This document shows positions 2,252 to 40,394 of a stretch of 64,000 nt of DNA, piece by piece (the stretch's first letter is position 1; the number at the start of each line of letters is the position of its first letter). The position numbers and the translations under genes were made by a program. The DNA is taken from the IMG/VR virus record IMGVR_UViG_3300031857_000010, positions 1 to 64,000 of that record. One strand, given 5' to 3'. The notes beneath the pieces were generated by a model, which was not told the origin of the DNA, did not search any database, and saw only the letters and a program-made list of their open reading frames with translations.

Positions 2252-2256
2252 AAATT

Positions 2257-3159: not shown

Positions 3160-3171
3160 AAAAAATAAATT

Positions 3172-4110: not shown

Positions 4111-4122
4111 AAATAAATAAAA

Positions 4123-7397: not shown

Positions 7398-7423
7398 TTA
7401 TATAATTTTATTTATTTAAAACA

Positions 7424-9697: not shown

Positions 9698-9700
9698 TAT

Positions 9701-10252: not shown

Positions 10253-10259
10253 ATTTTTT

Positions 10260-11186: not shown

Positions 11187-11191
11187 AATTT

Positions 11192-14100: not shown

Positions 14101-14557
14101 ATTTAGGAACATCAATATTTTTATATTGTTCAATTTGCCAATTGCTTACAAAAAGAAATGCATCTGGAAAATATTTTTTGTTTTCATCCGGATTGTAAGA
14201 TGAATCATGACTAGTTTCAAAAATTTTATATGATCTATTTTTATTATAAATAAAATCAGCAATTTCTTTTGGTAAAAAATATTCCGGAATTTCTTCAATA
14301 TGAATGAAATCTGGTTTGATATTATCAATTAAATCTTTAATTTCATATAATTTGTTTTGTCCTAAAGAGAAAAAATGATTTTCATCTAAAATTTTTGTTA
14401 TTCTGTTTCTTTGAATTACTAAAACTCCACCAGTAATATTTTCATATTCAATACAGAAAACCTCTAATTTATCCTTAAGAAGTTCTATTTTTTTGAATAA
14501 GTATTGTGGTAGACCCCCTGTTGAAAGGTGTGGAGCAATAAATATTATTTTTTTCAT
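11192..14557 (-). CDS. Multidomain protein: GT4 + FkbM methyltransferase + two GT-A-like domains
   Basis: GT4: APHLSTGG, NVGLFTPRKNQ, DLFLFTS, ETMPLVLREA. FkbM: DIGSNIGLF, LKIDCEGAE. Then YGCYNSH...ECDC, and QSCDNY...QEDMW. Confidence 0.75.
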   Translation of the reverse strand: MKKIIFIAPHLSTGGLPQYLFKKIELLKDKLEVFCIEYENITGGVLVIQRNRITKILDENHFFSLGQNKLYEIKDLIDNIKPDFIHIEEIPEYFLPKEIADFIYNKNRSYKIFETSHDSSYNPDENKKYFPDAFLFVSNWQIEQYKNIDVPKYLAEYPIEYKERPNREETLIKLGLDPKKKHILNVGLFTPRKNQAEIFELAKYFDNTVEFHFLGNQADNFKFYWEPLLINKPANCRIWGERNDTDTFYSCMDLFLFTSRGNNGDKETMPLVLREAIGWKIPILLYNLDVYQNYFDKFDNINYLSNSENNIELIKDKLKLRTKQKFFDVSYDENEGKIHYSIISNHPSLKTYNIRMRDPLTNLVFQSLYSDLSFNKGDGMWMIPNAQQNHRNGICVEFFDNDLNIIQSESFLDLKKTTWKPNVFPTTEIIIQNKKIELKCNPIDHSSFWSFYEIFIREDYKNIENNDIVVDIGSNIGLFTLYAASMGAKKVYSIEPIKETYEYLKFNTKDLSNIQVFNFGIGAKNEEVEFLTGEVSSISGKKELTENIEHYWGLNRKKEKVTIKNVNDFISENNINYIDYLKIDCEGAELEFFETIDKDFLKHKIKKITGEIHINSIGIEGYNFIVKTLKDCGFNYQDNYTDDKNLSNFYCIKKPKIKIIHILNNPEGPREIKSIESLRNLSSYGLDYEQLITPKYYDLPPYENCQRPHAISLNPGDYLLTPSHYGCYNSHKKSICDDYIKNYDAILICECDCIVFGEYKEVYEKIIDTYFLNNKHDLISTSFGKQIPGVEHENIVNDLFFTFKQSEAHCYLITKSHINEYADKLLNTNWDAYDLWCNIFFWNRKRGIYRIPYFLQQPGISSIDMRFKEGTDIDPNTPIYRKENIDDDITVIIQSCDNYERFWNGWYLSFSRYWDWSLNWPVYFCTEEKDLPFNDFRVNNIKSPKSIDSSQFSNRLLDILSKLNTKYVLYMQEDMWLTVKADYNTFKKSLHKVRLNDWNCLRIHEKLWGSYEFIKTSHFVEGKRVLKAKNNSEWLLTHNACIWNREFLISSLEENENPWKNEIDGTVRIANKYLDPKIYHLNERWYYQPGASQGGNLNPFMEEYERYLQYSKNLDHEFDLI

Positions 14558-14598: not shown

Positions 14599-15480
14599 TT
14601 ATTCTCCATTACCCCTAGAAAGTTGATCAAATTCTTGATCAAAATTCGTTATTGTTCTTTGTTCTCTGACATCGACGTTACCAAATTCAAAATCAGTTTT
14701 CCTTGTGAATAAATTGTATTGTCTGTAAATGAAATTCTGATCATTAAAATAAGTCAAAATACCATTTTGTAAATCTCTGGTCGAATTTCCATAAAGTGCA
14801 TAAGAAAGTGTTTTTATAGTTTGATCAACCATTTCCACTTCAACATAAAAAGGGTCAAAATAAGTATTTGTAATTAATACTTTTTGATTTTTTTGACCAA
14901 TATCTACTCTGACATTATTTGATATCAAACTACCCTGATCTGGTGATACTGTTAAAAACAAAATTGTTCCAGCAGGGTCTAGGACATAAGTTGTTGCCCC
15001 TTGATTTACGGTATTATTATTTACATTGATGCTTACCAAATCACTTGAAGTTATAATTCTTGTTAAATTATTGATTTTTACATCATTGCTATCAAAATAT
15101 TCAATTTGATAACCTACAAGTGAATTATTTCTAGAAAACTGTAAAGCAGGTATTACTATGCCTTTTTTTGATATATTTAGCTGATTATTATCGTTTGTTA
15201 CTACGTATGAACAATCTAATATCGTGGTTTGAAATGTTTTTGGCTTAATTAATATGCTATAATATCCCAATTTATTAAACACATTTGCCGGAAGTCTTAA
15301 TTTATACATTCCGTCAGCACCAATAAGTTTTCTAAAATCTGAATTTGTTATGGAGTTAAAAAGGGGCCTCAGTTGTATGTCGCCAATTTCCTCTCTAGAA
15401 GCACTATAGGCATAAAGAATGTCAACGTCATCAATTGACACATCTGCTAATTTGTTTACACCATATAGACCAACCGCCAT
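14599..15480 (-). CDS. Hypothetical protein, probably structural
   Basis: 293 aa beta-rich ORF at the end of the tail/baseplate block, preceded by a TATTTATT motif. Confidence 0.5.
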   Translation of the reverse strand: MAVGLYGVNKLADVSIDDVDILYAYSASREEIGDIQLRPLFNSITNSDFRKLIGADGMYKLRLPANVFNKLGYYSILIKPKTFQTTILDCSYVVTNDNNQLNISKKGIVIPALQFSRNNSLVGYQIEYFDSNDVKINNLTRIITSSDLVSINVNNNTVNQGATTYVLDPAGTILFLTVSPDQGSLISNNVRVDIGQKNQKVLITNTYFDPFYVEVEMVDQTIKTLSYALYGNSTRDLQNGILTYFNDQNFIYRQYNLFTRKTDFEFGNVDVREQRTITNFDQEFDQLSRGNGE

Positions 15481-15498
15481 ATTTTAATATTATTTAAA

Positions 15499-15506
15499 AA
15501 TAAATA
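15499..15506 (-). promoter_or_regulatory. Candidate late promoter TATTTATT
   Basis: 18 nt upstream of the ATG at 15480. Confidence 0.45.
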
Positions 15507-15519
15507 GTATTTTAAAAAA

Positions 15520-17982
15520 TTATAGAGATAACATTTCTTGATATACATTATTGATTTTCGGTTGAAAATAAGCTAAAACTTCTTGCCAATTGTTAAATGT
15601 GCTATTTCTTATCTCTTCTAAGTTATCATTTGATTGTTGAATATCTAAAATTTTACCATTTTTGATTAAATCTATTGACATTTCATAACCTCGGATAACA
15701 GACCATAAAGCTTTTTGGTACCTTTCAAATTCTCTATTTTCAAAAGATTTTTGGGCTAAATTCAAATGAAAATCTCCTCTTTCTTTTTGTTTTGTTTTTA
15801 TTTTTTGTTTATCTAAAACATAATTAAATTTAATTCTTTCTAGGGCTTTAAAATCATATGATTGCGTGTTATAAACTTGCCAAACCCTATCTGTAGGAAC
15901 GTAGTCTTCTACAAATGCACTTCCAGTTACATCGTTTAATTGTTTTTCAAATTCATCTGGGTTGTAAATATAATACTCAACATTGTCCTCTTTTATAATG
16001 GTGAGAGGTTCAGCATTTTGGGCAACAATTATAATATCTATATCTGAAGTATCATTTACAGTACCAAAATAATACGAACCATAAACATAAATGTTATATA
16101 TACCACTCATGGGAACACCAATTTTTTTTGCGATATTAAATAAATTTATAGAAGAGAGTTTTAAAATACTCTGTAATTTTGAATTTACTGAATCCTCTAA
16201 ATTGGGATCAAAAATGTCTCTACTTAAAATATTTGGGTTTGGTGTTAAATAATTTATATCAATATAATCTTGTCTGTATCTCTCTAAAAAACTGTCACTA
16301 AAATTCTCGAAAACAAATCCATTATACATTAATTTACACTTGTTTGTGTTTGTAACATCGATTTGTTCATAATAATTATATGTGCTTAAGTCATAAAATT
16401 CCTCTAAATAAATTATTAAATATTGACAAATTTGATTGGGATTGTTGAAAGGTCTTAAAGATAAAACTATTGGAGATCTAACTCCCCAATTCTTGTAAAT
16501 GTTTATATTTATGGTTTTAACAGTATCTCCTATATCAAATTGCAGTTCATATGTTGGATCTAAAACATCGTTGTTTGGATTGGCTAAGTTAAAAGCACTA
16601 ATTCCGTCATCAGGACCCAGAAGGCTTGGTGAGAAGTATTCGTAGTTTAATATAACTTTATCTCTTTTATTTGGGAAATTATGTTTTATTGAAATTGAAA
16701 GTTGATTAGTATTTAAGGGATCATAAATTTGACCAATATAGTCTAAATTATACCAATTTTGATCTTGAACAAATTCAAATTCACACCTAGTTAGATTCGG
16801 TACATTTGAATTGTTATTAGAGCCCATAGACATTGATCTAGATTGTCTAATACTCAAGCTTAAATTTGGGTTAGAGCTATCTATTAAAGTATTAATTTGA
16901 GCTGATAAATCAATTACACTTTGATAAATATAGTTTTGATTTATATCCTGCACACTATTGAAGTTGGGGCTATAACTCCTATAATTCCAATTAAAATATT
17001 GTTTAAAAACATTGAAACCTCTAAAGTTTTGTATTTGATTGTCATTTGATGGTTGAGGAATATTTATGACTTGTGCTGGAGAGCTAAAATAAATACCATC
17101 TTCTAAAACTATTTGTGCTGTATTGTTTTGACTTTGACTTATTGAATTATTGGATTGATTTTGCATTCTCAAAAAATTTACCGGAAGTAAACTTTCAAGA
17201 TATTTTATTGAATTGGTATTTGGACCGAAATTAGAATTTGAACTTTGTTGAAGTCTGATAATTTCATCTATGTTACCATAAAGTGGTTGACTATTAAAGT
17301 TATTTCTATACAAATATCTAGTTACATTAATATTTCCATCACATGTGTCTTTAAAATATTGTGAAAAGTCTTCAAATGATAATAAGGCACTTTTTTTATT
17401 AATTGTTATATTAAGATAGTAATTCTCACTATCTCCAGTAAAATTAATAAAATCAGATGGTCTTGTTGCGTTTGGATAGTTATTTGGTAAAAAATTACCA
17501 TTAGGTAAAACCCTATTGGTAAAATAATTTGTTAAAGAATTAGTTTTTAGATATTTTTCATCAGCATTGAATAAACTGTTTTTTGTATCTATGAGATTAA
17601 TATCAGTGTTTTCAATATCTGTACTTTGACCTTGATTTGAATAATTAATATATTTCCTATAATAATCATTAAAAAATTCTGCTAATTTTTTATTATCATA
17701 AAATAAATCCCTAAATTCCTCAATTGTAAGGAGGCTTTTTATATAATTAATAAACTCTAAAGCAATTTTTTCATTTTCAGGTTTATCTAAAAAAGCTTTG
17801 ACATTTAAATCATTTACTAATGATACACCTACCTGAGGTGTGTAAGAGAAATATTCTTGATTTAAATTAATATTTTGTTGAGTATCATACAATACAGGCT
17901 CGTTAGAATCTAAAGTCAAAAGACTATTTAGATTTGTATTAGCACTGAAGGCAATGTTGTATAATATCTCAAATTTTTGCAT
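15520..17982 (-). CDS. Asn-rich structural-type protein with a Calx-beta-like segment and a C-terminal Pol-beta-superfamily nucleotidyltransferase domain
   Basis: LQFDIGDTVKTININI (Calx-beta-like). NIYVYGSYYFGTVNDTSDIDIIIV is the hG[GS]x(9-13)DxD NTase signature, followed by a helical domain. Confidence 0.65.
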   Translation of the reverse strand: MQKFEILYNIAFSANTNLNSLLTLDSNEPVLYDTQQNINLNQEYFSYTPQVGVSLVNDLNVKAFLDKPENEKIALEFINYIKSLLTIEEFRDLFYDNKKLAEFFNDYYRKYINYSNQGQSTDIENTDINLIDTKNSLFNADEKYLKTNSLTNYFTNRVLPNGNFLPNNYPNATRPSDFINFTGDSENYYLNITINKKSALLSFEDFSQYFKDTCDGNINVTRYLYRNNFNSQPLYGNIDEIIRLQQSSNSNFGPNTNSIKYLESLLPVNFLRMQNQSNNSISQSQNNTAQIVLEDGIYFSSPAQVINIPQPSNDNQIQNFRGFNVFKQYFNWNYRSYSPNFNSVQDINQNYIYQSVIDLSAQINTLIDSSNPNLSLSIRQSRSMSMGSNNNSNVPNLTRCEFEFVQDQNWYNLDYIGQIYDPLNTNQLSISIKHNFPNKRDKVILNYEYFSPSLLGPDDGISAFNLANPNNDVLDPTYELQFDIGDTVKTININIYKNWGVRSPIVLSLRPFNNPNQICQYLIIYLEEFYDLSTYNYYEQIDVTNTNKCKLMYNGFVFENFSDSFLERYRQDYIDINYLTPNPNILSRDIFDPNLEDSVNSKLQSILKLSSINLFNIAKKIGVPMSGIYNIYVYGSYYFGTVNDTSDIDIIIVAQNAEPLTIIKEDNVEYYIYNPDEFEKQLNDVTGSAFVEDYVPTDRVWQVYNTQSYDFKALERIKFNYVLDKQKIKTKQKERGDFHLNLAQKSFENREFERYQKALWSVIRGYEMSIDLIKNGKILDIQQSNDNLEEIRNSTFNNWQEVLAYFQPKINNVYQEMLSL

Positions 17983-17985
17983 TCT

Positions 17986-18339
17986 TTATTTATTAATAGT
18001 TATAGAAAAAATTTCTGCCTTTTTAATTATATTCTGAGTGGTCGGTACAAGAGTATTGTTGCTATTTGTCTTACCACTAATGCCGGTAGATCTTATACTT
18101 TCAAAAAAGCCAAATTCTATAAAAGACGGATTAATTAATTGTCTTTCCATTGATACTCTTAAGGGATCTAATTCAACGTCAACATAATCATCGAATAATT
18201 TTAATTCTCTGTTTAGTTTTACATTAAGATAAAAATCTTTATGGTTTTGAGTTCCATAAGTTCCATCAGGCTGAACAATTCCCTCTGGTCTAGAATCTAT
18301 ATATAATTTTATTTTTAAATTTTTTTCCATTTTAGTCAC
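17986..18339 (-). CDS. Hypothetical protein
   Basis: 117 aa, tightly packed in the structural operon. Confidence 0.55.
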   Translation of the reverse strand: MTKMEKNLKIKLYIDSRPEGIVQPDGTYGTQNHKDFYLNVKLNRELKLFDDYVDVELDPLRVSMERQLINPSFIEFGFFESIRSTGISGKTNSNNTLVPTTQNIIKKAEIFSITINK

Positions 18340-21300
18340 TTGTTTGATTAGTGCTTTTTATCCAAGTAAATCCATTTTTATTACAATAGTCACCGTTGAT
18401 AGAAATATCATTTGAAAAATAAACATCTTCTATGGGACAATTATTTGAAGCTGTTGCTAAAAATCCATTAATTTTGATTGATCTATAAATAAGACTTGTT
18501 GATACTTTTTTAAGATTTCCTAAAAAACTATTACACCAAGCCCATCCCCAAACAGGATCTGAGCCTTGCCAAGCATTAGCCGAAAATCTTGTCCTTAAGA
18601 AAAAATCGGTTTCCTGATAGGTTAATTGACTAGAGGATCCTAAAGCAGATGAAATTAAAATGGATGGAGATTTTTTAAATGTTATTGATTTATTTATAAC
18701 TTTGTTTGATGGCGTTCCATTGTAGTTATATAATACAAAGTTTAAAAATGATATTATATAATTGCCTTGAGTTAATTTATTTACCGTCCTAATTCCTGAA
18801 TTAGTATTTATTTGATATACAAATTTATCATTTGTTGGAACGTCAAATGATAAATTTTTTAATGATCTTACAACATTATAAACCCCATTTACTCTAATAC
18901 TCAAAGGTCTTTCAGATATCCATATTTTTTCATTCGGTTTAACGTTAAAACCTAAAATATTTGATGATACAATTCCATTATTTATAATTTCTATTACAGC
19001 TTGGTTTTTTGTATTAACATTTGCCTGTGACCAATCATACAAAAATAGATTTTTCTGTGTGAATGAACCACCATATTGAGTTGTTGCCAATACAAAAGAA
19101 TCATCTTGAACAGATGGAGAAGTAAATCCATTTGGAAAGGTAGTCAAAGTACCATAACCTGCCTGTATTAGTAGTTGACCAAAATATAATTTTAAATTAA
19201 TTTGATAATCTGAAAAAGGCTCGAATAATAATATATCACTTATTGGAAAATTATTTTGTGTTGAATTTAATGGTGCTACTGGAATAAAATTATTCTGCAA
19301 AATATTGATACCTTTAGTTATAAATATTTGATTATATGTTGTATCAACATTTGATAAAGAACTAAATAAATATCCATTTGGAATAATCACTGCACTTGGA
19401 TAATATAATACATTTGTTGTTTTATCTAAACTGGTTCCCGTATAAGATTCAATAAATCCTTGAGCGTCATATTGAATTTGACTAAAACAATTTTTTATTC
19501 TTGTAAAAAAATAATAAGTTTCTTTTGAATTATCATTACCTGAATTTAATGTTATATTAGTATCTGTATTTATTTTTAAAGCGTTGTTAAATTCTTCTCC
19601 TAGTAAAACCGTTTTACTTAATAGGTTACTAGTTTTAAAATTATCTGAATTAGGATCTATGTTTGGTAGATAATTATAGCTGTTATTTTCAAACGTTATA
19701 GAATACTTACACTTAAAAAAACCCCAAATTGAATTTTGATTTAAACCTAAAAATGCTGGAATTGTACCTCCAAAAAATTCATCATTTGCTGGAAGTTTTA
19801 GTTTGAATTGTTTTCCATCGTATACAAACTGATCAGTAGAAACGCCAGTTGTAAAACCTGAAGTTACAACAACACTAATTGTTTCAGAAAATTTATATAG
19901 TTTATTATCAAATACAACGTTACTTCCTAAATTTGTAAAATTTATTTTAAAATAGGGTTCTAAAACTAAACTTCTTAATAATTTGCTATCGGTATTTCCG
20001 GTTACTAGTGTATTTTTCTCAATATAACCTTGATTAGATTGGTAGTAAGTTTGTAGTCTTGTTAAATTATCATTTAACCCTTGACTAACATATGTATTTT
20101 TAGCTACGGGTTTGTTGTATAGACTTCTTAATACAGCTATTCCATTAGGGGCATCATATGGAATTATCAATTCAACATATCTTTTATCGATGTCTTTATT
20201 TACATATAAAGTATAATTTATACTTTGTCCTTGATTAAAAGAACCTGCTATTAAATTGCTTGTAAGATTTCTAAATTTTAAAACTATTTTTCTTTGAATA
20301 TCGTCTTGTCTTGCTGAAATGAAATAAAAATTGACAGAATATAATAAATCAATTTGATTTAAATTTACAACAATACTATTGCTAAACCCTGTTCCCTGTG
20401 TATTTTGAAAGCCAAATGTTGACAAACAATCAGTTTCATTTTCATCAATATATATTTCTAAACTTTGATTTGGAACTAGTAGTTTTCTGTCAAGATTTAT
20501 ATCAATAGGAATTATTAGCGGGTTATTATCTTGTCTTGGTTCTGTAAATTCAAAAGATTGACTTGAAAAAGACACTTGAGATGGAACATCGTTATCGTTT
20601 ACATATAAGGAAATCATTTGAGCCTTTTCTGGGTCTGGTAAAAGACCTAAAATTGGAGTTACTTGCAAAGTAAGTCTTTTGACAGGTTCAACATAAAAAT
20701 CATCAGTAATTCTGATTCTTATATTTTTTGTAAGATTATCATTTTTATTCCATTCAATGTCATTAAAATTTAAAATAACATCTTGAGGCAATGTTACTGT
20801 TGTATATTCATTCATGTTTTCATCAACACCATATACAACATTTAATTTTGCTTTTTCATAACCTCTCGGTGGTTTTGAAATAGATATTTCAACATCAAAA
20901 AATTTATTTTCTAATAATCTGTCGTTAGAACCACCTTCTGTAACAGTAATTTGTTCTTGTTCAAAATATATAAAAGGGGGTCCAGTAGGTTCAACTTCTC
21001 TCCTAATCCAATGTCTGTCATAAAAAAATGGATAATTATTATTTATTTCAATAATATTTCCATTATCCAAAATTTCAGCTGTTTCAGAACCATATTCAAG
21101 TGGTAACCCATCTTCATTATAATAAAAAAATGGAAATTCTTGCTCTGCAGATAAATTTGAAATAAAATTATAGGTTGAAACAAAAATTGATTTGTTAGTA
21201 TTTGTTAGACTTTTAATGTCAAGTTCAAAAGGAAAAAAATAGTGTGCCTTTTTTTTTCCGTAAAGATTTTTACTCAAATCACCATTTCTAGAATCTAGAG

Positions 21301-21646
21301 GTTTGGAAAGTACAGACCAAGTTAATGCTGATGTATTTGAACTTTTATCATATATCCAAAATGGATAATTTGTCAGACCACTAGTGGCATTTGTACTAGA
21401 ATCGCCTATTCTGAAATCTAATTTTAGATTATCACAATCGCCCCATTTAGATTCTACCATACCGTACAAACAAAATTTATAAGAAGCATTTCTTTCCTGT
21501 TCAAATTTTACAGAAAAATCAAAAACATTATCTGCTTTTTCTACTTTTAAAATACTTTCCTCTCTGGATAATTCAGCATTTACAAAAAGTGAAATGTTTT
21601 TTGCATTTACATAATCTTTACTTGGTAATAATTCTTTTATTTTCAT
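18332..21646 (-). CDS. Large structural protein with Calx-beta-like domains
   Basis: 1104 aa. IYFEQEQITVTEG...IRITDDFYVEP...LYVNDNDVPSQVSFSSQSFEFTE. Confidence 0.55.
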   Translation of the reverse strand: MKIKELLPSKDYVNAKNISLFVNAELSREESILKVEKADNVFDFSVKFEQERNASYKFCLYGMVESKWGDCDNLKLDFRIGDSSTNATSGLTNYPFWIYDKSSNTSALTWSVLSKPLDSRNGDLSKNLYGKKKAHYFFPFELDIKSLTNTNKSIFVSTYNFISNLSAEQEFPFFYYNEDGLPLEYGSETAEILDNGNIIEINNNYPFFYDRHWIRREVEPTGPPFIYFEQEQITVTEGGSNDRLLENKFFDVEISISKPPRGYEKAKLNVVYGVDENMNEYTTVTLPQDVILNFNDIEWNKNDNLTKNIRIRITDDFYVEPVKRLTLQVTPILGLLPDPEKAQMISLYVNDNDVPSQVSFSSQSFEFTEPRQDNNPLIIPIDINLDRKLLVPNQSLEIYIDENETDCLSTFGFQNTQGTGFSNSIVVNLNQIDLLYSVNFYFISARQDDIQRKIVLKFRNLTSNLIAGSFNQGQSINYTLYVNKDIDKRYVELIIPYDAPNGIAVLRSLYNKPVAKNTYVSQGLNDNLTRLQTYYQSNQGYIEKNTLVTGNTDSKLLRSLVLEPYFKINFTNLGSNVVFDNKLYKFSETISVVVTSGFTTGVSTDQFVYDGKQFKLKLPANDEFFGGTIPAFLGLNQNSIWGFFKCKYSITFENNSYNYLPNIDPNSDNFKTSNLLSKTVLLGEEFNNALKINTDTNITLNSGNDNSKETYYFFTRIKNCFSQIQYDAQGFIESYTGTSLDKTTNVLYYPSAVIIPNGYLFSSLSNVDTTYNQIFITKGINILQNNFIPVAPLNSTQNNFPISDILLFEPFSDYQINLKLYFGQLLIQAGYGTLTTFPNGFTSPSVQDDSFVLATTQYGGSFTQKNLFLYDWSQANVNTKNQAVIEIINNGIVSSNILGFNVKPNEKIWISERPLSIRVNGVYNVVRSLKNLSFDVPTNDKFVYQINTNSGIRTVNKLTQGNYIISFLNFVLYNYNGTPSNKVINKSITFKKSPSILISSALGSSSQLTYQETDFFLRTRFSANAWQGSDPVWGWAWCNSFLGNLKKVSTSLIYRSIKINGFLATASNNCPIEDVYFSNDISINGDYCNKNGFTWIKSTNQTSD

Positions 21647-24600
21647 TAATAATTAAATGCTTGTATATAACTTTTTGATTGTGGGGACCCTCCTCCAAAT
21701 ACACCTTCAAGATAGTATCTCATGTTATTGTAACCTTTAGGATATTCATTTGGCTGCAAAGGTTTAGGTTGAAATACTGATAAAGAAGCTCCGTTATTTA
21801 TTTGATTCAGCCAATCTGAAAAAAACCATGACCCTTGGAATGGAACATTATTTCTGATATCAAATGATCTTGCGTCTTCTAGTTCTTCTCCTACATATGG
21901 TAAAAATCCTTTAGCGTCAAAATAACTTCTACTTACTTTATATGGATTTGTAATTTCTCCATACGCCAAACCATTTATAAAAACACCATAGTAATTTTCT
22001 CTTCTAAAAGTTGAATCATAAGGTTGGCCTCCATTTGTAGCATAGTCGGATGATGCGTTGCATTTACTAGGGCCTAATCCAACTTCTCTAGGAACTAAAC
22101 TAGTCAAATAATAATTTTTTTCTTCACCCTCTGCACCTACAGCATATCTATAAACTGGTTGAACTATACCTGCAATTGATTTTATTCCTCTTGGAGTATA
22201 CGTTTGTCCTAAATAAAACAAGTATGATGCACCTTCATAAGAATTTGTATTAGGATTATATTTATCATTAGCTGGTAAAACAATTTCAAAATACGAATAT
22301 GTTTGAAAATCCATTCCTTTGTCCCAACCTCCGGGAACCACTTCTTGGCCATTGATATTAACTTTTGTTGTTCCTATATTAACAATTCTTAACTGACCTT
22401 GTCTATAATTTTCTATTCTAGTGAATTTGATTTCACATCTTTTTCTAAAAGAATAGGATGGACTTGTAGTTAGTTCTCCTTTTTGTAACCAGACAAAACC
22501 TTCAGATTTTGGACCGGGACAAGTTTTACAAGTATCTGAACTTTTTTTAGACTGATCAACAATTAATTCTTGTAAATTAAATCTTGCGAACTTAGCTGTG
22601 AAAGGAGGTTTTTTTGGATTTAAATAATACGGTTTTTCAATTCTATAGATATTTAATCTTCCAAATTTGGAAAAGAAATTTGCTCGACTTCCCATTTGAA
22701 GTGTAACTTCATCAATGTAATTGTAAATTGAAAAGTAATATGAGTTATATTCATTTGGACTTTGATAAACTGAATTTTTATCATGATTTGCAAAAATATT
22801 ATAGTCATTCTCTAATAAATGATCTCCCCAAGATTCATTTTTAATTCTTGGCCACCCTCTAGGTTTTAGCCAATATGCATATCCAGCTTCTAATCTTTGA
22901 TATCTTTCTCCAGCAATATCTGGTTTACCAGCCCAATCATAAGCTTCTGGATATTTATCTAAATCATAAGGTGTGAGTCCAGCATTATACCCATTAGACC
23001 ACTCTTCAGTCCAGTGATCAACTGCTTCATATCTCCAAATTTCATTTTTTGTTACTTCTCTTGAAAAATTATTTCCTGCATAAACTTGATTGAATGATTG
23101 TAAACCATAACCATTAGCATTTGTAGCCCAAGCATCTGGACCTCCTGCCATATCACCGTCTATAAATCTTGGTTGTAGAAAAAACTGTCCTTCAGATAAG
23201 TTGTATGTATTGGTTATTCCATTTCTATTTGTTATAGTAGGATTTAAATTTGGTGATCCATCAGGATTCCATGATTTTAATGGGTTTGTAATTATTGGTT
23301 TTCTTGCAACTCTGTATGTATCAGGATAATTTAATGACCATGGTTTTTCATAAGGATATTTTCCAATTCCGGAACCGGGAGGAGGAGAATCAGACTCATT
23401 TTCCCAACCACTAAATCTATTTAAATCAAAATGATTTACCTTAAAATATTTTACATTACCGTTTAAATCTGTTGGCCAATTTTCTGCAAAACCAGTAGTT
23501 TGAGATGAAACATTAGGGTCGGGAAAAGAAGTTTTTATTTGATATGCTCCTAGCCATAAACCTTTGTTTCCATTGGTGTCAATACCGTTTGGATCATAAA
23601 GGTTGGCAGGTAATTTAAATGCATTAAAATTAGTAGTATTAAATTCAACTTTATTATTTTTAATCTTGAATTCATCATTCCACGAAGTTTTTAAATCCAA
23701 GTTTCTATCATAAATGTCAATTATTTTTACTAATTCTACTTTTGGTAAAACATCTACGACAAAAGGTTTAGTCATGTCTCTTATAAAAACAGTAAAAGGA
23801 TTATTGACTCCAATTGCAGCCAATTCTTCAAGAACTTTTGGAGTAGATTCGACTGACTGATTAGTTATATTTTGTGGATTACCAGCTTGTGCTGAAATGG
23901 GATAAGTAAAAAAAGTTATCCATTTTCTTAAATCCAACACAATTGAAAGTTCTATTTCTGTATATCCTGTTTGAAATTCACCCCAAGACGGGACTATGTT
24001 TACTGGAAATTGATTAAAATATAAATGAGGTATTGTTGAAATATTTGGCTCATCATTTAAAGGGTATGGAAAAAAATTTAATGCAACTTCTTCTGGTTCT
24101 AACCCTTGTTTTAATAAATCTACTTCCAACATTAAAGTTTGTTGTCCAGTTGGAATGTTGTGAAGAACAAATTCTCCAAATTCGTTGGTTAAAGATGTAT
24201 ATTTATATTTTGGTGGTATGGTATCATTTCCTAAATCTTTTGGAGAATATGTGACATCAGTAAGATATGATTGAAAACTTCCATAGCTTGTTAAATTATT
24301 AGGCCCATTTACAGATGTTAAATTCTCAAATAAATTCAATTCAATTCTATTCCCATTTTCATCTACAGATCCTATTGAAGGTATTTCTTCACTCGGATTA
24401 AAAATTCCGACGACTGCATTTTTTATTGGAACTCTTAACTTATTTCCAACATCATCTAATAAAACTTGAATAGCTTCTATTTTTCCAAAAAGCACACCTC
24501 TATCATTAGTAAATTTTGGAGATTCATTTATTGGTACATTGTATACATTTAATGTATTTAAAACTTCTACCCCTCTATTAATTTTTATATTTAAAAAATA

Positions 24601-24999
24601 ATCATTAAACAAAACCTCTTCAAAAAAAACATATGAAAATAAATTGCTTAAAGGGATTTGATTTTGATTTGCTTGATATTTAATTCTATCTATGTAATCT
24701 TCCGAAATATAAGCTCTTTCGTTGGAATCTATTTTTTTAGATACTTCGTTTTGTATTACACTTCCAGTATAAATATTATAACCAGCACTTATAGCTGAAA
24801 GTGGAATGTTGTAATTATCATAATCTAATCCAAATTCTGTTTCTAAAATTGATTGACTTAGTTTTAAAGGATTGTTATTTACATCAGTTATAAGATAATA
24901 AATAGAATTGTCATCAGAGGTTTGACCACTGAATGTAGTGAAGTAATTAATTAATGTTTTTACTGCTTCTCCTTGTATAAGAATTTCTTCTTGTTGCAT
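21646..24999 (-). CDS. Large structural protein with a carboxypeptidase-regulatory/prealbumin-like beta domain
   Basis: 1117 aa. GVLFGKI...IKNAVVGIF...TNEFGEFVLHNIPTGQQTLMLEVDL. Confidence 0.5.
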   Translation of the reverse strand: MQQEEILIQGEAVKTLINYFTTFSGQTSDDNSIYYLITDVNNNPLKLSQSILETEFGLDYDNYNIPLSAISAGYNIYTGSVIQNEVSKKIDSNERAYISEDYIDRIKYQANQNQIPLSNLFSYVFFEEVLFNDYFLNIKINRGVEVLNTLNVYNVPINESPKFTNDRGVLFGKIEAIQVLLDDVGNKLRVPIKNAVVGIFNPSEEIPSIGSVDENGNRIELNLFENLTSVNGPNNLTSYGSFQSYLTDVTYSPKDLGNDTIPPKYKYTSLTNEFGEFVLHNIPTGQQTLMLEVDLLKQGLEPEEVALNFFPYPLNDEPNISTIPHLYFNQFPVNIVPSWGEFQTGYTEIELSIVLDLRKWITFFTYPISAQAGNPQNITNQSVESTPKVLEELAAIGVNNPFTVFIRDMTKPFVVDVLPKVELVKIIDIYDRNLDLKTSWNDEFKIKNNKVEFNTTNFNAFKLPANLYDPNGIDTNGNKGLWLGAYQIKTSFPDPNVSSQTTGFAENWPTDLNGNVKYFKVNHFDLNRFSGWENESDSPPPGSGIGKYPYEKPWSLNYPDTYRVARKPIITNPLKSWNPDGSPNLNPTITNRNGITNTYNLSEGQFFLQPRFIDGDMAGGPDAWATNANGYGLQSFNQVYAGNNFSREVTKNEIWRYEAVDHWTEEWSNGYNAGLTPYDLDKYPEAYDWAGKPDIAGERYQRLEAGYAYWLKPRGWPRIKNESWGDHLLENDYNIFANHDKNSVYQSPNEYNSYYFSIYNYIDEVTLQMGSRANFFSKFGRLNIYRIEKPYYLNPKKPPFTAKFARFNLQELIVDQSKKSSDTCKTCPGPKSEGFVWLQKGELTTSPSYSFRKRCEIKFTRIENYRQGQLRIVNIGTTKVNINGQEVVPGGWDKGMDFQTYSYFEIVLPANDKYNPNTNSYEGASYLFYLGQTYTPRGIKSIAGIVQPVYRYAVGAEGEEKNYYLTSLVPREVGLGPSKCNASSDYATNGGQPYDSTFRRENYYGVFINGLAYGEITNPYKVSRSYFDAKGFLPYVGEELEDARSFDIRNNVPFQGSWFFSDWLNQINNGASLSVFQPKPLQPNEYPKGYNNMRYYLEGVFGGGSPQSKSYIQAFNY

Positions 25000-25048: not shown

Positions 25049-26485
25049 TTAATAATCTTGTGGATATAACTTATCGACTATTTTGAAATTCAATTTTTCA
25101 GCAATTATTCTTCTAGTTCCTAGTTCGTTAATTCTGAATGTAATTTGATAGTTTTGATTTGACAATAGCCAAGAAGTGTCTAAGTCTAAGAAAGATTTAG
25201 CACACCCATCAATAATTGCAGAATTACATGGTGTCCAAGGAATTATCTCTATGACATTATTCATAGAAAGTCTGTATTCGAGTCCAAAATTTGTTTTTGG
25301 ACTTTTTAAAGTATAATTCACTCTCGTATCAGCATAAATTCTAATGAGTTCATCTGTTTGTAGGGTGTCATTATTATTTAACCCATATGTTGTGACCACA
25401 TAATCATTTATACTTTTAGAATTATTTGTGTAATAATTCTGATTTATATCAAAAAATTGAATAAAATCTGTTTGATCATATCCGGGTTGAAATGTTACCC
25501 CTTGCCAAACATCTTTATATCTTTGACCGGGTGTTGCACCACTCATCCAAACATCAACATAATATACGCCTTTAGAAAGTTGTTGAGGTACCAAACCTGT
25601 AAACACATTAGCATTACTCATCGTTTTTATACTCACTGTACTAGATGAATAGAAATTTGTTGCCTGATTTCCTGAAAACGTATAAAGAAATAATCTGCAA
25701 GGTCTATTATTTGTTACTATATTTCTGTCATCATTTATTGTTTGATTGTATGTAACCTCCAAATAAGGTTTAAATGATGAATTTGTTTTTTGAGTAAAAA
25801 ATGAAGCAATATTTCGTGTATCTCCACTTTCTAATTCATAGGGTCTGGAATAACTGACTGCTAATCCATAATTTATAGAACCACCAGACAACCAATCATT
25901 AACAATATTTGTAACATCCATACTTATATCTTCGCTACCCAGCTGAAAATGCTGAGTGGAATAATAAGTTGTGGATGCTGTTGGATTGTTATATATTCCG
26001 GGTTCATTCCAAGAATCATTAGATTTTGCATAAATCCAATTTGAATTACCGGTAAGTCTCAGATTGCCTGCAGACTTTATCAAATAATTTGTATCAAATA
26101 AATCATAACCTCTTCCTTCATCCCAATCTTTGTCTATTGGGAAAGAAATTAGATCAAAAGAAGCGGAAATAGCTTTATTTAAAGTCGCATTTTGATATTC
26201 TGGTATGAGAATTTTATCTGAAGGGACTGAATTTTTTAATACAATTCTAAAGGATTGTACGGTTCCAGAATTTATAATTAAATCACTAAATTTTGTTACT
26301 AAATTAGAAAGGTCAAAATACAACAATAATCTGCTTATATTATTTTCTCTATATACTCCATTTTCGGTGAATCCTCCACCATAAAATATATCAGAAACAG
26401 GATTTTGTGAAGAATTTATGTATTCAAAGGCAGAACCGCTTGCAATTGTATTGCTTTTGCTTGGATAAATGCGATAAACAGACAT
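25049..26485 (-). CDS. Structural protein with a DNRLRE-like domain
   Basis: SRLLLYFDLSNL, W..G.G, W..PG, DVTNIVNDWLSG...NYGLAV, KPYLEVTY pattern. Confidence 0.5.
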   Translation of the reverse strand: MSVYRIYPSKSNTIASGSAFEYINSSQNPVSDIFYGGGFTENGVYRENNISRLLLYFDLSNLVTKFSDLIINSGTVQSFRIVLKNSVPSDKILIPEYQNATLNKAISASFDLISFPIDKDWDEGRGYDLFDTNYLIKSAGNLRLTGNSNWIYAKSNDSWNEPGIYNNPTASTTYYSTQHFQLGSEDISMDVTNIVNDWLSGGSINYGLAVSYSRPYELESGDTRNIASFFTQKTNSSFKPYLEVTYNQTINDDRNIVTNNRPCRLFLYTFSGNQATNFYSSSTVSIKTMSNANVFTGLVPQQLSKGVYYVDVWMSGATPGQRYKDVWQGVTFQPGYDQTDFIQFFDINQNYYTNNSKSINDYVVTTYGLNNNDTLQTDELIRIYADTRVNYTLKSPKTNFGLEYRLSMNNVIEIIPWTPCNSAIIDGCAKSFLDLDTSWLLSNQNYQITFRINELGTRRIIAEKLNFKIVDKLYPQDY

Positions 26486-26501: not shown

Positions 26502-26509
26502 TATAAATA
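26502..26509 (-). promoter_or_regulatory. Candidate late promoter TATTTATA
   Basis: 16 nt upstream of the ATG at 26485. Confidence 0.55.
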
Positions 26510-26555
26510 GAACAATAAAAAAATCAATAATTTTTTAATGATATATTTATTATCA

Positions 26556-26945
26556 ATGGCTAATACAATAAATATCCGATTTCCGTTCAGAGAAACTTAT
26601 GATGGTGGTGTTTTTGATAGTACAATTACATCTGAAGCAGCTTATCAATCAGATTTAATATCTCTTTTGACAACAAAAAGAGGTCAAAGAGTTATGAGAT
26701 CTAAATTATATTCTCCAATATATGATTATTTAATGGAGCCTTTAGATACCATTACTGAACAAGAACTAAGGAGAGATATAGATTCAAAGGTTAGAGAGTA
26801 CATACCACAAATTGAGATAAAAAAAATTAGATTTAATCCAGATTATGATAATAATGCTCTCGGAATTAAAATTATTTACATTATAAAAGAATATTTTAGT
26901 ATTGAGAAAACTTTAGATTTATCTTTCCCAACTGAAATACAATAA
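26556..26945 (+). CDS. Baseplate wedge subunit, T4 gp25/GPW-like
   Basis: DLISLLTTKRGQRVMRSKLYSPIYDYLMEP...REYIPQIEI. Start placed at the second Met (MANTINIRFPF); the ORF track start is 26538. Confidence 0.85.
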   Translation: MANTINIRFPFRETYDGGVFDSTITSEAAYQSDLISLLTTKRGQRVMRSKLYSPIYDYLMEPLDTITEQELRRDIDSKVREYIPQIEIKKIRFNPDYDNNALGIKIIYIIKEYFSIEKTLDLSFPTEIQ

Positions 26946-26950: not shown

Positions 26951-28807
26951 ATGGCTAATTTAAAACCAAAAATAAATTATTTAAATAAAGATTTCGATAG
27001 TATACGAAAAGAAATTGTAGACATTTTAAAAGTATATTATCCTGATCAATTTCAAGATTTCAATGTAACTAGCATTGGAATGTCACTGGTTGATTTATTA
27101 GCTTATGTAGGTGATATTTTATCCTATAACACAGATAAAAGGTTTAATGAACTTTTTATTGATGGAGTTTCTGAAAGGGAAGCTGTTTTCAGATTAGCAA
27201 AAACATTTGGTTATAGACCTGTAGGAAATAGACCAGCAGTTAGTATAGTTGATATTACTGTAGGGGTTCCGACTACTGCAAATGGCCCCAATACAGCTTA
27301 TTTACCAATTTTCAGACCCGGAGTTCAAGCAAAAGGTAATGGACAAGTTTTTGAAACATTTAATGAAATAGATTTTGGTAGTGATTTTTCTGCTACAGGT
27401 GTACCTAATAGAATTGTTAGTCCTGTATTTAATTCTAATCAAGATATTATTAGATACGACATAACTAAAAGGGAAGTTGTTAAGGCTGGTACTACATTAG
27501 TTTATAAAAAAGAAATTAGTACAGATGAGGCAGCAACATCATTTTATGAAATTTTATTACCTGAGACTAATGTTTTAGAAGTAGTTTCAGTGATTAACAA
27601 ACCGGGTACAGGTTATGTAACAGTTCCAACATATCAAGAATTTAATGATTATAATTTGAAATATTACGAAGTTGATTATTTAGCACAGTCACAGGTGTTT
27701 GTTGAAGATACGGCTGTATTGCCAACAAATGGTGTTTATGCTGGAAAATGGCTAGATGTTCCTCAGAGATTTATCAAAGAATATATGTCTAATGGAAGAC
27801 ATAAAATTACTTTTGGTGGAGGAACAAATAATAATAATGCTTATGAAAATTATTTGACTAACTTTAATATATATGATACTGGCTTAATAAATATTTCAGA
27901 TGTTTTAAATAATGATTCTTTAGGAACTAGATTACTCGCAAATTCTACTTTATTTGTACAGTATAGAATTGGAGGGGGCAGTTTATCAAATGTCGGTGCT
28001 GGTGCTCTGACAAATATTGCTAATATTTCAGCCGTTTTTGGAGGTAATGACCAAGGAACAATTCAAAATATTTTAGCAACAACTACAATTAATAATCCTT
28101 TGCCGGGATATGGTGGAGCTGAACCACAAAGTGTTGATGAAATTAAATTTTATATAAGTTCAAATTATGCAGCTCAAGATAGATGTGTAACATTGTCAGA
28201 TTATATTTCAAGAGTTAATCAAATACCGGGTAAATTTGGAGCACCATTTAGAACATGGGGTAAAGTTGAGGATAATAAAGTAAAATTGTATATAATAACA
28301 AAGAATGCAGATGGTAAGCTTGCAAACACATCTAATACTTATGTCAAAAACAATATTCTAAATTATCTGAAAAATTATAGAATGGTAAATGATTTTGTTG
28401 AAATAAATGATGGACAAATTGTTAATTTACAAATAGAAGCAGATTTATATATTGATAAACAATTTAATTCAAATGAAATTAAATTGGCTGCAATTACCGC
28501 TATAAAAGAATTTATGGATGTTAATAAATGGACATTCAATCAAAATATTTACATATCTCAAATTACCGATACTTTGAGAGAAATACCCGGAGTTATTAAC
28601 GTTGTTGATATTAGAGCTTATAATATGGAAGGTGGAAACTATTCAAGTTCTTTAATAACACAGGCAATTGGACCTAGACTATCTGTTATAGGAACAAGTG
28701 TATATAAAACTGAAATAGAATTTGTAGACAATACTATTTTCGGAAATTCAACTTCAATGTTTGAAATTAAATTCCCTGATGGAGATATAAAAGTACGTGT
28801 TGCTTAA
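26951..28807 (+). CDS. Baseplate wedge protein, T4 gp6/baseplate-J-like
   Basis: YLNKDFDSIR, SIGMSLVDLLAYVGD, YRIGGG, GGAEPQSVDEIK, AQDRCVTLSDY. Adjacent to the gp25-like gene. Confidence 0.85.
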   Translation: MANLKPKINYLNKDFDSIRKEIVDILKVYYPDQFQDFNVTSIGMSLVDLLAYVGDILSYNTDKRFNELFIDGVSEREAVFRLAKTFGYRPVGNRPAVSIVDITVGVPTTANGPNTAYLPIFRPGVQAKGNGQVFETFNEIDFGSDFSATGVPNRIVSPVFNSNQDIIRYDITKREVVKAGTTLVYKKEISTDEAATSFYEILLPETNVLEVVSVINKPGTGYVTVPTYQEFNDYNLKYYEVDYLAQSQVFVEDTAVLPTNGVYAGKWLDVPQRFIKEYMSNGRHKITFGGGTNNNNAYENYLTNFNIYDTGLINISDVLNNDSLGTRLLANSTLFVQYRIGGGSLSNVGAGALTNIANISAVFGGNDQGTIQNILATTTINNPLPGYGGAEPQSVDEIKFYISSNYAAQDRCVTLSDYISRVNQIPGKFGAPFRTWGKVEDNKVKLYIITKNADGKLANTSNTYVKNNILNYLKNYRMVNDFVEINDGQIVNLQIEADLYIDKQFNSNEIKLAAITAIKEFMDVNKWTFNQNIYISQITDTLREIPGVINVVDIRAYNMEGGNYSSSLITQAIGPRLSVIGTSVYKTEIEFVDNTIFGNSTSMFEIKFPDGDIKVRVA

Positions 28808-35520: not shown

Positions 35521-35568
35521 ATTTAAAATTTTTTATTTAAAAATATTTTTTTTGTTGGATAAAGTAAA

Positions 35569-36240: not shown

Positions 36241-36276
36241 ATTTTTAAAAATAATTTTATTAAAAATAAAGTAAAC

Positions 36277-36306: not shown

Positions 36307-36325
36307 AAAAACATTAATTATTTTT

Positions 36326-36754: not shown

Positions 36755-36760
36755 AGTAAA

Positions 36761-40388: not shown

Positions 40389-40394
40389 AATTAT

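What the first reader, a model, noticed from the sequence alone, without database searches (positions are those of the whole stretch)
15520..16150. Pol-beta-type nucleotidyltransferase fused to a tail/baseplate-cluster protein
Seen: the last ~210 aa of an Asn-rich, Calx-beta-like ORF in the structural operon carry an intact YGS...DID NTase signature and a helical subdomain, in one uninterrupted frame. Inference: a virion-borne NTase, either delivered at infection to modify host proteins or RNAs or to counter defence, or acting during assembly. I know of no precedent for this fusion.
Basis: partly seen in the sequence, partly recalled or inferred. Interest (0 to 1): 0.65.

Follow-up and report, generated by a model that had tools for sequence, protein, structure and literature searches.

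The report
RlaP-like nucleotidyltransferase fused to baseplate-neighbour protein
A clade of uncultured freshwater jumbo phages carries a small RNA-repair-type nucleotidyltransferase as the tail end of a large protein encoded beside the baseplate genes; the fusion is real and conserved, but nothing yet shows that the enzyme travels in the virion.

Summary
Window 15520-17982 (-) is one 820-aa ORF. Its last ~210 aa (15520-16150) form a Pol-beta nucleotidyltransferase (NTase) core plus a four-helix bundle, with G635-S636, D647/D649 and E669 all present.

The fusion is not an assembly artefact:
- Contigs from independent studies bridge the domain junction.
- More than 30 orthologues, down to ~28% identity, keep the same architecture and synteny.
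- The domain is under strong purifying selection (dN/dS 0.05).

The genome is a 217-kb record of a distantly T4-like freshwater phage. The gene lies in a conserved six-gene block transcribed divergently from gp25-like and gp6-like baseplate wedge genes.

The NTase belongs to a large family of mostly standalone ~200-aa phage proteins (phage G gp109, XacN1 ORF208) next to RlaP (PF10127), an RNA 3'-end NMP-adding repair enzyme. The closest solved folds are Hailong HalB and the aminoglycoside nucleotidyltransferases (ANT).

Three limits apply:
- The N-terminal 575 aa match no known virion protein.
- No RNA ligase was found in the genome.
- One relative lacks the domain entirely, and one subclade has lost the catalytic residues.

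Virion delivery is therefore inference only. I rate it a new variant of a known kind, of moderate interest.

The parts
15520..17982 (-). Whole ORF, 820 aa (P0001): N-terminal clade-specific module plus C-terminal NTase
   Evidence: The identical protein is seen on 14 contigs, and full-length orthologues reach down to 36% identity.
16258..17982 (-). N-terminal module, aa 1-575. It has a conserved helical start (aa ~60-150) and no known family. It is the part kept in the natural variant that lacks the NTase.
   Evidence: No Pfam or PHROG match. AlphaFold pLDDT is 62.9 overall. hhalign against T4 tail proteins is negative. P0033 ends at the equivalent of residue 574.
16735..16902 (-). Hypervariable low-complexity linker, aa ~361-416
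   Evidence: Rich in indels in alignment A1. A 170-aa insertion sits here in the 936-952-aa subclade. P0010 has a G/N-rich expansion here. Run X14 shows replaced sequence at 16734-16882. Contigs L022 and L023 lose the reading frame inside this region.
16393..16785 (-). Ig/Calx-beta-like beta-sandwich, aa ~400-530
   Evidence: pLDDT ~90. VIA-align Z 5.5-5.9 to CEP192 SPD-2, CALX-CBD1, NCX1 CBD12 and integrin beta4 Calx-beta. Foldseek E ~3e-3. The fold match is generic.
16153..16257 (-). Poorly conserved tether between the two modules, aa 576-610
   Evidence: Alignment A1. dN/dS is 0.15 here, against 0.04-0.06 in the NTase domain.
15883..16152 (-). Pol-beta NTase core, aa 611-700. It carries G635-S636 (16075-16080), D647/D649 (16036-16044), E669 (15976-15978) and the invariant D698-R699.
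   Evidence: Pfam PF01909 above its cut-off. Motifs verified by translation. Conservation table. Alignment to T4 NrdC.11.
15523..15882 (-). Four-helix bundle subdomain, aa 701-820, with conserved basic residues K712, R716, K729, K757 and R764
   Evidence: Model helices 130-153, 157-180, 186-198 and 204-224 of the 225-aa domain. Conservation. Full-length match to HalB, ANT and AadA two-domain enzymes.
14599..15480 (-). Downstream neighbour, 293 aa. It is the most conserved member of the block (81/88/66% identity to relatives) and its function is unknown.
17986..18339 (-). Upstream neighbour, 117 aa. Its stop lies 3 nt before the P0001 start. Function unknown.
18332..24999 (-). Two large variable proteins (1104 aa and 1117 aa) of the same conserved block. 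No known family.
25049..26485 (-). First gene of the block, 478 aa, with a CBM96/DNRLRE-like carbohydrate-binding domain (both matches below their cut-offs)
   Evidence: Pfam CBM96 at 20 bits against a cut-off of 26. NCBIfam DNRLRE_dom at 32.9 bits against a cut-off of 34.
26538..26945 (+). gp25-like baseplate wedge protein, transcribed divergently from the block. A TATAAATA motif lies at 26502-26509.
   Evidence: Pfam GPW_gp25 at 31.6 bits, above its cut-off of 27.2. phrog_261 at 7.5e-15. Motif position.
26951..28807 (+). gp6-like baseplate wedge protein
   Evidence: phrog_219 at 1.5e-30. TIGR02243 at 3.4e-25. tblastn matches genes annotated as baseplate wedge in Flavobacterium and Synechococcus phages.

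Best explanation
P0001 is a two-module protein of a distantly T4-like freshwater jumbo phage.

Shown:
- A clade-specific 575-aa N-terminal module carries, through a flexible tether, a C-terminal Pol-beta nucleotidyltransferase with a four-helix bundle.
- The fusion is ancient within this phage clade.
- In most lineages it keeps the metal-binding carboxylates and is under strong purifying selection.
- It is encoded in a conserved six-gene block beside the gp25/gp6 baseplate wedge genes.
- The enzyme module belongs to the phage-borne family that borders RlaP (PF10127).

Inferred:
- Like RlaP, it transfers one or a few NMPs from NTPs to the 3'-OH of RNA, for example nuclease-trimmed tRNA. Its two-metal site would be formed by D647, D649 and E669, and the basic helical domain would hold the RNA or NTP phosphates. 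This would be an accessory counter-defence or RNA-healing function.
- The N-terminal module anchors it to the tail or baseplate assembly, so that the enzyme is made late and may be carried in the particle and be present at the start of the next infection.

The accessory character fits the clean loss of the domain in one relative and its catalytic decay in one subclade.
For: Domain and motifs.

Family placement:
- The profile search finds 762 representatives, mostly 190-230 aa and standalone.
- 18 of 60 family members match Pfam RlaP.
- The ESM Atlas fold search gives TM 0.79/0.86 and rmsd 2.1 A over 198 residues to viral ~200-aa clusters, some annotated RlaP or 'putative RNA repair pathway protein'.
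- Other members of the family are fused to RNase T plus RNA ligase 1, or to endonuclease V.
- RlaP adds 1-2 NMP to RNA 3'-OH and prefers damaged RNA (PMC12776372). It is the commonest NTase of jumbo phages (PMC7824862).

Fusion real and old:
-.
- dN/dS of the C-terminal domain is 0.051, against 0.098 for the N-terminal module.

Baseplate neighbourhood conserved in relatives at 36-48% identity.

Other tail-type features nearby: a CBM-like domain in the first gene of the block and collagen-repeat genes at 2-5037.

Accessory nature: NTase-less P0033 and the degenerate subclade.
Against: - No evidence places the protein in virions. The N-terminal module and all five block neighbours lack similarity to any known tail or baseplate protein.
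- P0001 itself does not reach the RlaP model. The hhalign match of its own clade to T4 NrdC.11 is weak (23%).
- No Rnl1, Rnl2-type or RtcB ligase was found in the 217-kb record, which is 83% complete. The usual RlaP partner is therefore missing.
- How a C-terminal domain of a baseplate-associated protein would reach the cytoplasm is unknown.
- The block runs on directly into glycosylation genes, which allows a different substrate.
- The domain is retained without catalytic residues in the 936-952-aa subclade, which suggests some non-catalytic role.
Confidence: 0.4

Rival explanations
1. The protein is an intracellular enzyme only. It is not part of the particle. The N-terminal module targets or regulates the NTase inside the infected cell, and its position beside the baseplate genes is a coincidence of gene order.
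For: The N-terminal module and its neighbours have no similarity to known virion proteins. The standalone relatives sit among small early-type or accessory genes, not among structural genes.
Against: The six-gene block stays beside gp25/gp6 in relatives down to 36% identity, even where the downstream genes differ. The large size, Asn-rich low-complexity stretches, Ig-like sandwich and hypervariable linker are typical of fibre or baseplate-periphery proteins.
Confidence: 0.25
2. The NTase acts on a non-RNA acceptor during assembly. It would O-nucleotidylylate a sugar, a glycan or a virion protein, as ANT enzymes do with aminoglycosides, in step with the adjacent glycosylation genes.
For: Aminoglycoside nucleotidyltransferases are full-length structural matches at Z 7.2-7.8. 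The same strand continues into a GT1-FkbM methyltransferase protein, a Polysacc_synt_2 dehydratase, an RmlD-like reductase and a GT2/GT9 protein.
Against: Domain presence does not track the glycosylation genes. L013 keeps the fusion without that cluster downstream, while L009 keeps the cluster but has lost the NTase. NCBIfam ANT_9 scores 13.6 bits against a cut-off of 340. The nearest predicted structures are RlaP-like, not ANT.
Confidence: 0.12
3. The domain serves mainly as a binding or structural module and catalysis is secondary, that is, it is a pseudoenzyme or on the way to becoming one.
For: In the 936-952-aa subclade the third carboxylate is K/K/K/R, the G-S motif is DS/GP/GK/KP, and D647 is K or Y in two members. 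K712, K729 and R764 are mostly kept there. P0031 has D647N together with Asn at the third carboxylate.
Against: 19 of 21 main-clade orthologues keep the full motif. dN/dS of the core is 0.04. The window's own copy is intact.
Confidence: 0.12
4. The domain is a HalB-like, protein-primed poly-dA synthase that supplies oligodeoxyadenylate to keep a host Hailong-type channel closed.
For: HalB is the top solved-structure match: Z 9.3, 170 residues aligned, rmsd 4.0 A. HalB makes poly-dA that holds HalA shut (review PMC13434031).
Against: The margin over the ANT enzymes is only ~1.5 Z units, and sequence identity is 14%. The profile match to HalB has E 0.12. The RlaP-like predicted structures fit far better. 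No HalA-like gene lies adjacent.
Confidence: 0.05
5. The fusion is an assembly or gene-calling artefact.
For: Some gene calls split the ORF: P0036 in L021 and P0034 in L022/L023.
Against: L021 has a run of N just upstream, and its frame reads straight through the domain junction. The L022/L023 break lies in the hypervariable linker, not at the junction. Contigs of runs X13 and X14, from other studies, cover 15300-16379 and 15300-16734 without indels. The stretch is held by runs from 14 studies.
Confidence: 0.01

Closest known systems
RlaP (PF10127, RNA ligase-associated Pol-beta NTase; T4 NrdC.11, PfRlaP)
   Same: Both have an NTase core followed by a helical domain that forms a cleft. The GS, DxD and third-acid positions align with T4 NrdC.11. 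Both are common in jumbo phages. The nearest predicted structures are partly annotated RlaP, and 18 of 60 family members match the Pfam model.
   Different: P0001 does not match PF10127. The family is about 200 aa, against 250-340 aa for RlaP. No RNA ligase is found in this genome. Here the domain is fused to a 575-aa module in a baseplate-adjacent block.
Standalone ~200-aa phage NTases (Bacillus phage G gp109, Xanthomonas phage XacN1 ORF208, Lak megaphage ORFs)
   Same: They are direct sequence relatives covering the whole C-terminal domain at 22-30% identity, and they belong to the same profile family.
   Different: They are single-domain proteins among small accessory genes. Many have Asn or Gln where this protein has the third carboxylate E669.
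Hailong HalB (PDB 9dbh/9dbi/9dbj)
   Same: It is the best solved-structure match and has the same two-subdomain layout and similar size (217 aa).
   Different: Sequence identity is 14%. There is no HalA partner gene. HalB is a host defence component, whereas this is a phage gene. Tyr-primed poly-dA synthesis was not tested.
Aminoglycoside and lincosamide nucleotidyltransferases (ANT(4'), AAD(9), AadA, LinB)
   Same: They share the full-length two-domain fold, at Z 7.2-7.8.
   Different: There is no family-level sequence match. The context is unrelated to antibiotic resistance.
Phage proteins that carry enzymes into the host (polyvalent proteins, T4 Alt, N4 virion RNA polymerase)
   Same: The concept is the same: an enzymatic module attached to, or packaged with, virion components and available at infection (PMC7824862).
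   Different: Those are head-packaged or internal proteins with shown delivery. Here the virion location is not shown, and the scaffold lies beside baseplate genes.

Membership tests
Pol-beta superfamily nucleotidyltransferase (PF01909/PF18765) | An hG[GS] motif followed by [DE]x[DE] on the next strand | tested here: met
   G635-S636 and D647-I-D649 are present. PF01909 scores 24.5-27.3 bits against a cut-off of 21.
Pol-beta superfamily nucleotidyltransferase (PF01909/PF18765) | A third catalytic carboxylate on the following strand | tested here: met
   E669 is D or E in 19 of 21 main-clade orthologues. It aligns with the third Asp of T4 NrdC.11.
Pol-beta superfamily nucleotidyltransferase (PF01909/PF18765) | The alpha/beta NTase fold | tested here: met
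   The model has pLDDT 88.8. Its top structural matches are all NTases.
RlaP (PF10127) | A match to the family model above its cut-off (23 bits) | tested here: not met
   No match for P0001 or anywhere in the genome at E<=1. Only 18 of 60 family relatives match at E<=0.01.
RlaP (PF10127) | An NTase domain plus a C-terminal helical domain forming a conserved, basic cleft | tested here: inconclusive
   The two-subdomain model and the conserved K/R residues fit. The PfRlaP structure was not among the library matches, so no direct superposition was possible.
RlaP (PF10127) | Genomic association with an RNA ligase or RNA repair genes | tested here: not met
   No Rnl1, Rnl2-type or RtcB gene in the 217-kb record. 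The record is only 83% complete, and the Rnl1 control search found nothing in any control genome.
RlaP (PF10127) | Adds 1-2 NMP to RNA 3'-OH | not testable with these tools
   This is a biochemical property (PMC12776372).
Hailong HalB | Fold similarity over the whole protein | tested here: met
   Z 9.3, 170 of 217 residues aligned, rmsd 4.0 A. The sequence profile match has only E 0.12.
Hailong HalB | A two-gene operon with the HalA membrane channel | tested here: not met
   The flanking genes are the 117-aa and 293-aa block members, which match no Pfam, PHROG or NCBIfam family. They were not scanned against PADLOC or for membrane segments. The gene is phage-borne.
Hailong HalB | Tyr-primed, template-independent poly-dA synthesis | not testable with these tools
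   This is a biochemical property (PMC13434031).
Aminoglycoside nucleotidyltransferases (ANT) | A family-level sequence match | tested here: not met
   NCBIfam ANT_9 scores 13.6 bits against a cut-off of 340. The similarity is at fold level only.
MNT / MntA antitoxin (type VII TA) | A minimal ~100-140-aa NTase paired with a HEPN toxin gene | tested here: not met
   Only the GS..DxD core matches: MntA scores 18.9 bits against a cut-off of 60, and PDB 5yep aligns over 30 residues. There is no separate HEPN gene, and the helical subdomain is fused.
CD-NTase / AbiEii defence NTases | A match to the family models or folds | tested here: not met
   PADLOC gives only weak PDC-S09 and PDC-M05A core matches. 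CD-NTase structures appear only at Foldseek probability 0.1-0.14.
T4-type tail or baseplate structural protein (N-terminal module) | Homology to a known virion protein | tested here: not met
   PHROGs, Pfam and NCBIfam give nothing. tblastn against 50,697 phage genomes matches only the C-terminal domain. hhalign against 17 T4 tail proteins gives probability below 1%. The BFVD and PDB fold searches give only a generic beta-sandwich.
T4-type tail or baseplate structural protein (N-terminal module) | Encoded within the tail or baseplate gene module | tested here: met
   The block abuts gp25-like and gp6-like genes here and in L009, L012 and L013.
T4-type tail or baseplate structural protein (N-terminal module) | Presence in purified particles | not testable with these tools
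   The phage is uncultured and no proteome is available.

The most novel reading that the evidence does not exclude
The phage pre-loads an RNA 3'-end-healing nucleotidyltransferase onto its tail or baseplate. The enzyme would then enter, or sit at, the infection site with the DNA and counter host tRNA- or RNA-trimming defences before any phage gene is expressed. This would be a virion-delivered RNA repair enzyme, a delivery route not described for RlaP-type enzymes.
Probability: 0.12. Interest if true: 0.7.

Novelty: new variant of a known kind. Interest (0 to 1): 0.45.

Why it matters
RlaP-type NTases are the commonest nucleotidyltransferases of jumbo phages, and they were characterised biochemically only in late 2025. 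All described members are free cytoplasmic enzymes tied to RNA ligases.

Here the same module has been welded, for a long evolutionary time, to a large baseplate-neighbour protein in a phage that shows no RNA ligase. Either the enzyme has a ligase-independent job, or its place and time of action (late, possibly in the particle) matter.

The natural series of intact, catalytically dead and deleted versions in otherwise syntenic phages offers ready-made controls for testing what the domain contributes.

If the protein is not in the virion, the finding reduces to an unusual but ordinary domain fusion.

Tried and rejected
1. Giant virus or T4 capsid hallmarks. Capsid_NCLDV and Gp23 searches found nothing, and the controls were silent too, so this is uninformative. 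PHROGs portal and large terminase matches settled that this is a tailed phage.
2. Identity of the N-terminal module and the block neighbours. All of these were negative or generic: Pfam, PHROGs, NCBIfam, PDB sequence search, Foldseek against PDB and BFVD, VIA-align wide, two ESM Atlas look-alike searches, tblastn against phages, and hhalign against 17 T4 tail or baseplate proteins.
3. Word-index search with the C-terminal domain alone found only a fragment of the same protein. The exhaustive profile search was needed.
4. Defence-system families. PADLOC gave only weak matches to the NTase core.
5. Split-gene forms. P0036 and P0034 looked like standalone or split versions. They are explained by a scaffold gap and by a frame break in the hypervariable linker.
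6. T4 late promoter motif. TATAAATA is not enriched in the window (27 found, 21.6 expected). It therefore cannot be used to time the block, although one copy sits 29 nt upstream of the gp25-like gene.
7. Raw reads. The sampled 3% of run X21 held none. A 151-nt contig from an RNA library covers 16971-17121 at depth 2, which is no proof of transcription.
Full report
**What is there**

Window 15520-17982 (minus strand) is a single open frame of 820 codons, kept as P0001. The flagged stretch 15520-16150 encodes residues 611-820.

Pfam NTP_transf_2 matches residues 628-673 above its curated cut-off (24.5-27.3 bits against 21), and Polbeta matches at its threshold. Translating 15976-16080 shows the signature directly: G635-S636, D647-I-D649 and E669.

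A 19-sequence alignment of the C-terminal 225 residues gave a confident AlphaFold model (pLDDT 88.8, pTM 0.84). It has an alpha/beta core followed by four long helices.

The protein is Asn-rich: 15.6% Asn in residues 1-590 against 8.7% for the phage proteome. Residues ~400-530 fold as a beta-sandwich whose tied best matches include Calx-beta domains, but only at Z 5.5-5.9, so the resemblance is generic.

**What genome this is**

The window is the first 64 kb of a 216,699-bp linear virus record estimated at 83% complete. GC is about 27% and the genes are densely packed.

PHROGs identify a portal and a large terminase at 71-77 kb. The terminase is about 24% identical to those of T4-like phages. 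The stretch occurs in runs from 14 studies, almost all labelled lake, freshwater or 'fungus' metagenomes. This is therefore a distantly T4-like freshwater jumbo phage, not a giant virus.

**Is the fusion real**

Yes, on four lines of evidence.
- The identical protein is recorded on 14 contigs. The word-index search returned 33 relatives, most of them full-length at 790-864 aa and down to 36% identity.
- Four proteins of 936-952 aa are also full-length, with a ~170-aa insertion in the middle.
- A deeper clade of 670-700 aa (P0035 from L013, and P0041, P0085, P0091, P0139, P0144) has the same two modules. P0041's N-terminal part matches the N-module profile at 99.8% probability.
- Contigs from runs of other studies cover 15300-16379 (one difference) and 15300-16734 (eleven substitutions, no indel). 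Both bridge the domain junction at about 16150-16260.

Two apparent 'split' gene calls are artefacts. L021 has a run of N just upstream, and its frame reads straight through the junction. L022 and L023 lose the frame inside the hypervariable linker, not at the junction.

Between the window and an 82%-identical orthologue, dN/dS is 0.051 for the NTase domain and 0.098 for the N-terminal module.

**Catalytic residues across orthologues**

| Group | Members | G-S motif | D647 / D649 | Third acid (E669 position) |
|---|---|---|---|---|
| Main clade | 21 | G[SA] in all | intact in 20; P0031 has D647N | D or E in 19; N in P0020 and P0031 |
| 670-700-aa clade | 6 | GS | SDxD intact | Q or N, as in many standalone relatives |
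| 936-952-aa subclade | 4 | DS/GP/GK/KP | D647 is D/D/K/Y; D649 kept | K/K/K/R |

The 936-952-aa subclade is thus degenerate, while K712, K729 and R764 are mostly kept there.

One relative, P0033 (545 aa), stops at the equivalent of residue 574. The next gene, the 293-aa homologue, starts 43 nt later, so the NTase is cleanly absent in an otherwise syntenic phage.

**What the enzyme module is**

- tblastn against 50,697 phage genomes matches only the C-terminal ~190 residues. The hits lie under standalone ~200-aa ORFs of phage G (gp109) and XacN1 (ORF208), and in unannotated Lak and other huge-phage records.
- An exhaustive profile search found 762 cluster representatives at E<=1e-3, mostly 190-230 aa.
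- Eighteen of 60 members match Pfam RlaP at E<=0.01. The family profile aligns to T4 NrdC.11, a named RlaP member, at 94% probability over the NTase core, and places E669 on its third Asp.
- A shape search of the ESM Atlas gave TM 0.79/0.86 and rmsd 2.1 A over 198 residues to viral ~200-aa clusters, some annotated RlaP or 'putative RNA repair pathway protein'.
- Other members of the family are fused to RNase T plus RNA ligase 1, or to endonuclease V.
- Among solved structures, Hailong HalB is first (Z 9.3, 170 residues, rmsd 4.0 A). AAD(9), ANT(4') and AadA follow at Z 7.2-7.8.
- MNT proteins match only the 30-residue core. CD-NTases appear only at negligible probability, and PADLOC gives only weak core matches.

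From the literature: RlaP adds one or two NMPs to RNA 3'-OH ends and prefers damaged RNA (PMC12776372). It is described as the most prevalent NTase family of jumbo phages, and its distribution mirrors that of RNA ligases (PMC7824862).

P0001 itself does not reach the RlaP model. I therefore place it beside RlaP, not in it.

**Context**

The gene is the fifth of six minus-strand genes (478, 1117, 1104, 117, 820 and 293 aa). The first of these starts 52 nt from a divergently transcribed pair:
- a gp25-like baseplate wedge protein (Pfam 31.6 bits, above its cut-off of 27.2; phrog_261 at 7.5e-15);
- a gp6-like wedge protein (phrog_219 at 1.5e-30; TIGR02243 at 3.4e-25; tblastn matches annotated baseplate wedge genes).

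The same six-gene order next to gp25/gp6 is found in L009, L012 and L013. In L013 the genes after the block differ.

The 478-aa protein has a CBM96/DNRLRE-like domain just under the family cut-offs. In this window the strand continues into glycosyltransferase, methyltransferase and sugar-nucleotide genes. Collagen-repeat genes lie at 2-5037.

None of the six block products, including the N-terminal module of P0001, resembles any known virion protein by any method tried. 'Tail/baseplate cluster' is therefore supported by position, and 'virion-borne' is not shown.

**How it most likely works**

Shown: a catalytically equipped, selectively maintained RlaP-like NTase is tethered to a conserved clade-specific module encoded in a baseplate-adjacent block.

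Inferred:
- It uses a two-metal mechanism (D647, D649, E669) to add nucleotides to RNA 3' ends, and the basic helical bundle holds the substrate.
- It is made late with the tail genes and may ride in the particle.
- Its role is accessory counter-defence or RNA healing, which fits its loss or decay in some lineages.

Against this reading:
- No RNA ligase was found in the record.
- P0001 fails the RlaP model.
- No delivery route is known.
- The domain is retained without catalytic residues in one subclade.

I give the full chain 0.4. The rivals are an intracellular-only enzyme (0.25), a glycan or protein nucleotidyl-transferase acting in assembly (0.12), a mainly structural pseudoenzyme (0.12), a HalB-like poly-dA synthase (0.05) and an artefact (0.01).

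**Novelty and verdict**

Both the module and the idea of enzymes attached to phage particle proteins are known. I did not find this module joined to a baseplate-neighbour protein in the papers searched, nor in the phage genome collection. It is a new variant of a known kind, of moderate interest. It is worth a bench test because nature supplies intact, dead and deleted versions.

Noticed in passing
window 16735-16902 (aa ~361-416 of P0001); L022:4158-4615; P0010: A strain-level hypervariable, low-complexity linker lies inside the gene. Sequence is replaced in run X14, P0010 has a G/N-rich expansion, a subclade has a 170-aa insertion, and two JGI contigs lose the reading frame here. Whether this is real variation or mis-assembly of mixed strains is unresolved.
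   Followed up: partly
P0022, P0023, P0026, P0030 (936-952 aa orthologues): This subclade has lost the NTase catalytic motif (third acid is K or R, and the G-S motif is altered) but keeps the domain and most of its basic residues. It looks like a pseudoenzyme.
   Followed up: partly
L009:10001-11638 (P0033, also on a 484,699-bp contig): This natural orthologue ends exactly at the module boundary and has no NTase, in an otherwise syntenic block.
   Followed up: yes
window 2-2251 (+) and 2257-5037 (+): An ORF open at its 5' end carries collagen triple-helix repeats (Pfam 4.2e-34). Three ORFs of similar size (300-312 aa) with no family match follow it; whether they are related to each other was not tested. 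They may be fibre genes convergent with the minus-strand operon.
   Followed up: no
window 5034-14557 (-) and 34327-43157 (-): There are two large sets of sugar-modification genes. They include a 1121-aa GT1 + FkbM methyltransferase + unknown C-terminal protein, GT2/GT9, Polysacc_synt_2, an RmlD-like gene and several NAD-dependent epimerases/dehydratases. This is an unusually heavy glycosylation load for a phage.
   Followed up: partly
window 26502-26509 (+): A T4 late-promoter-like TATAAATA lies 29 nt upstream of the gp25-like start. The motif is not enriched window-wide (27 found, 21.6 expected).
   Followed up: partly
G000:C1:71119-74262 and 74322-77063 (outside the window): The portal ORF is 1047 aa with an internal HNH endonuclease match at residues 440-540. 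The large terminase is 913 aa. Both are oversized, which suggests inserted elements.
   Followed up: no
G000:C1:153812-155278 and 204596-204836 (outside the window): A cluster of 13 tRNA genes plus two more elsewhere. An aragorn call at window 1944-2032 lies inside the collagen-repeat ORF and is probably false.
   Followed up: no
P0140, P0141 (relatives of the NTase family): The same NTase family occurs fused to RNase T plus RNA ligase 1, and to endonuclease V. This supports a nucleic-acid end-processing role for the family.
   Followed up: partly
window 16971-17121: One 151-nt contig from a freshwater metatranscriptome library matches perfectly at depth 2. DNA carry-over cannot be excluded.
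   Followed up: no
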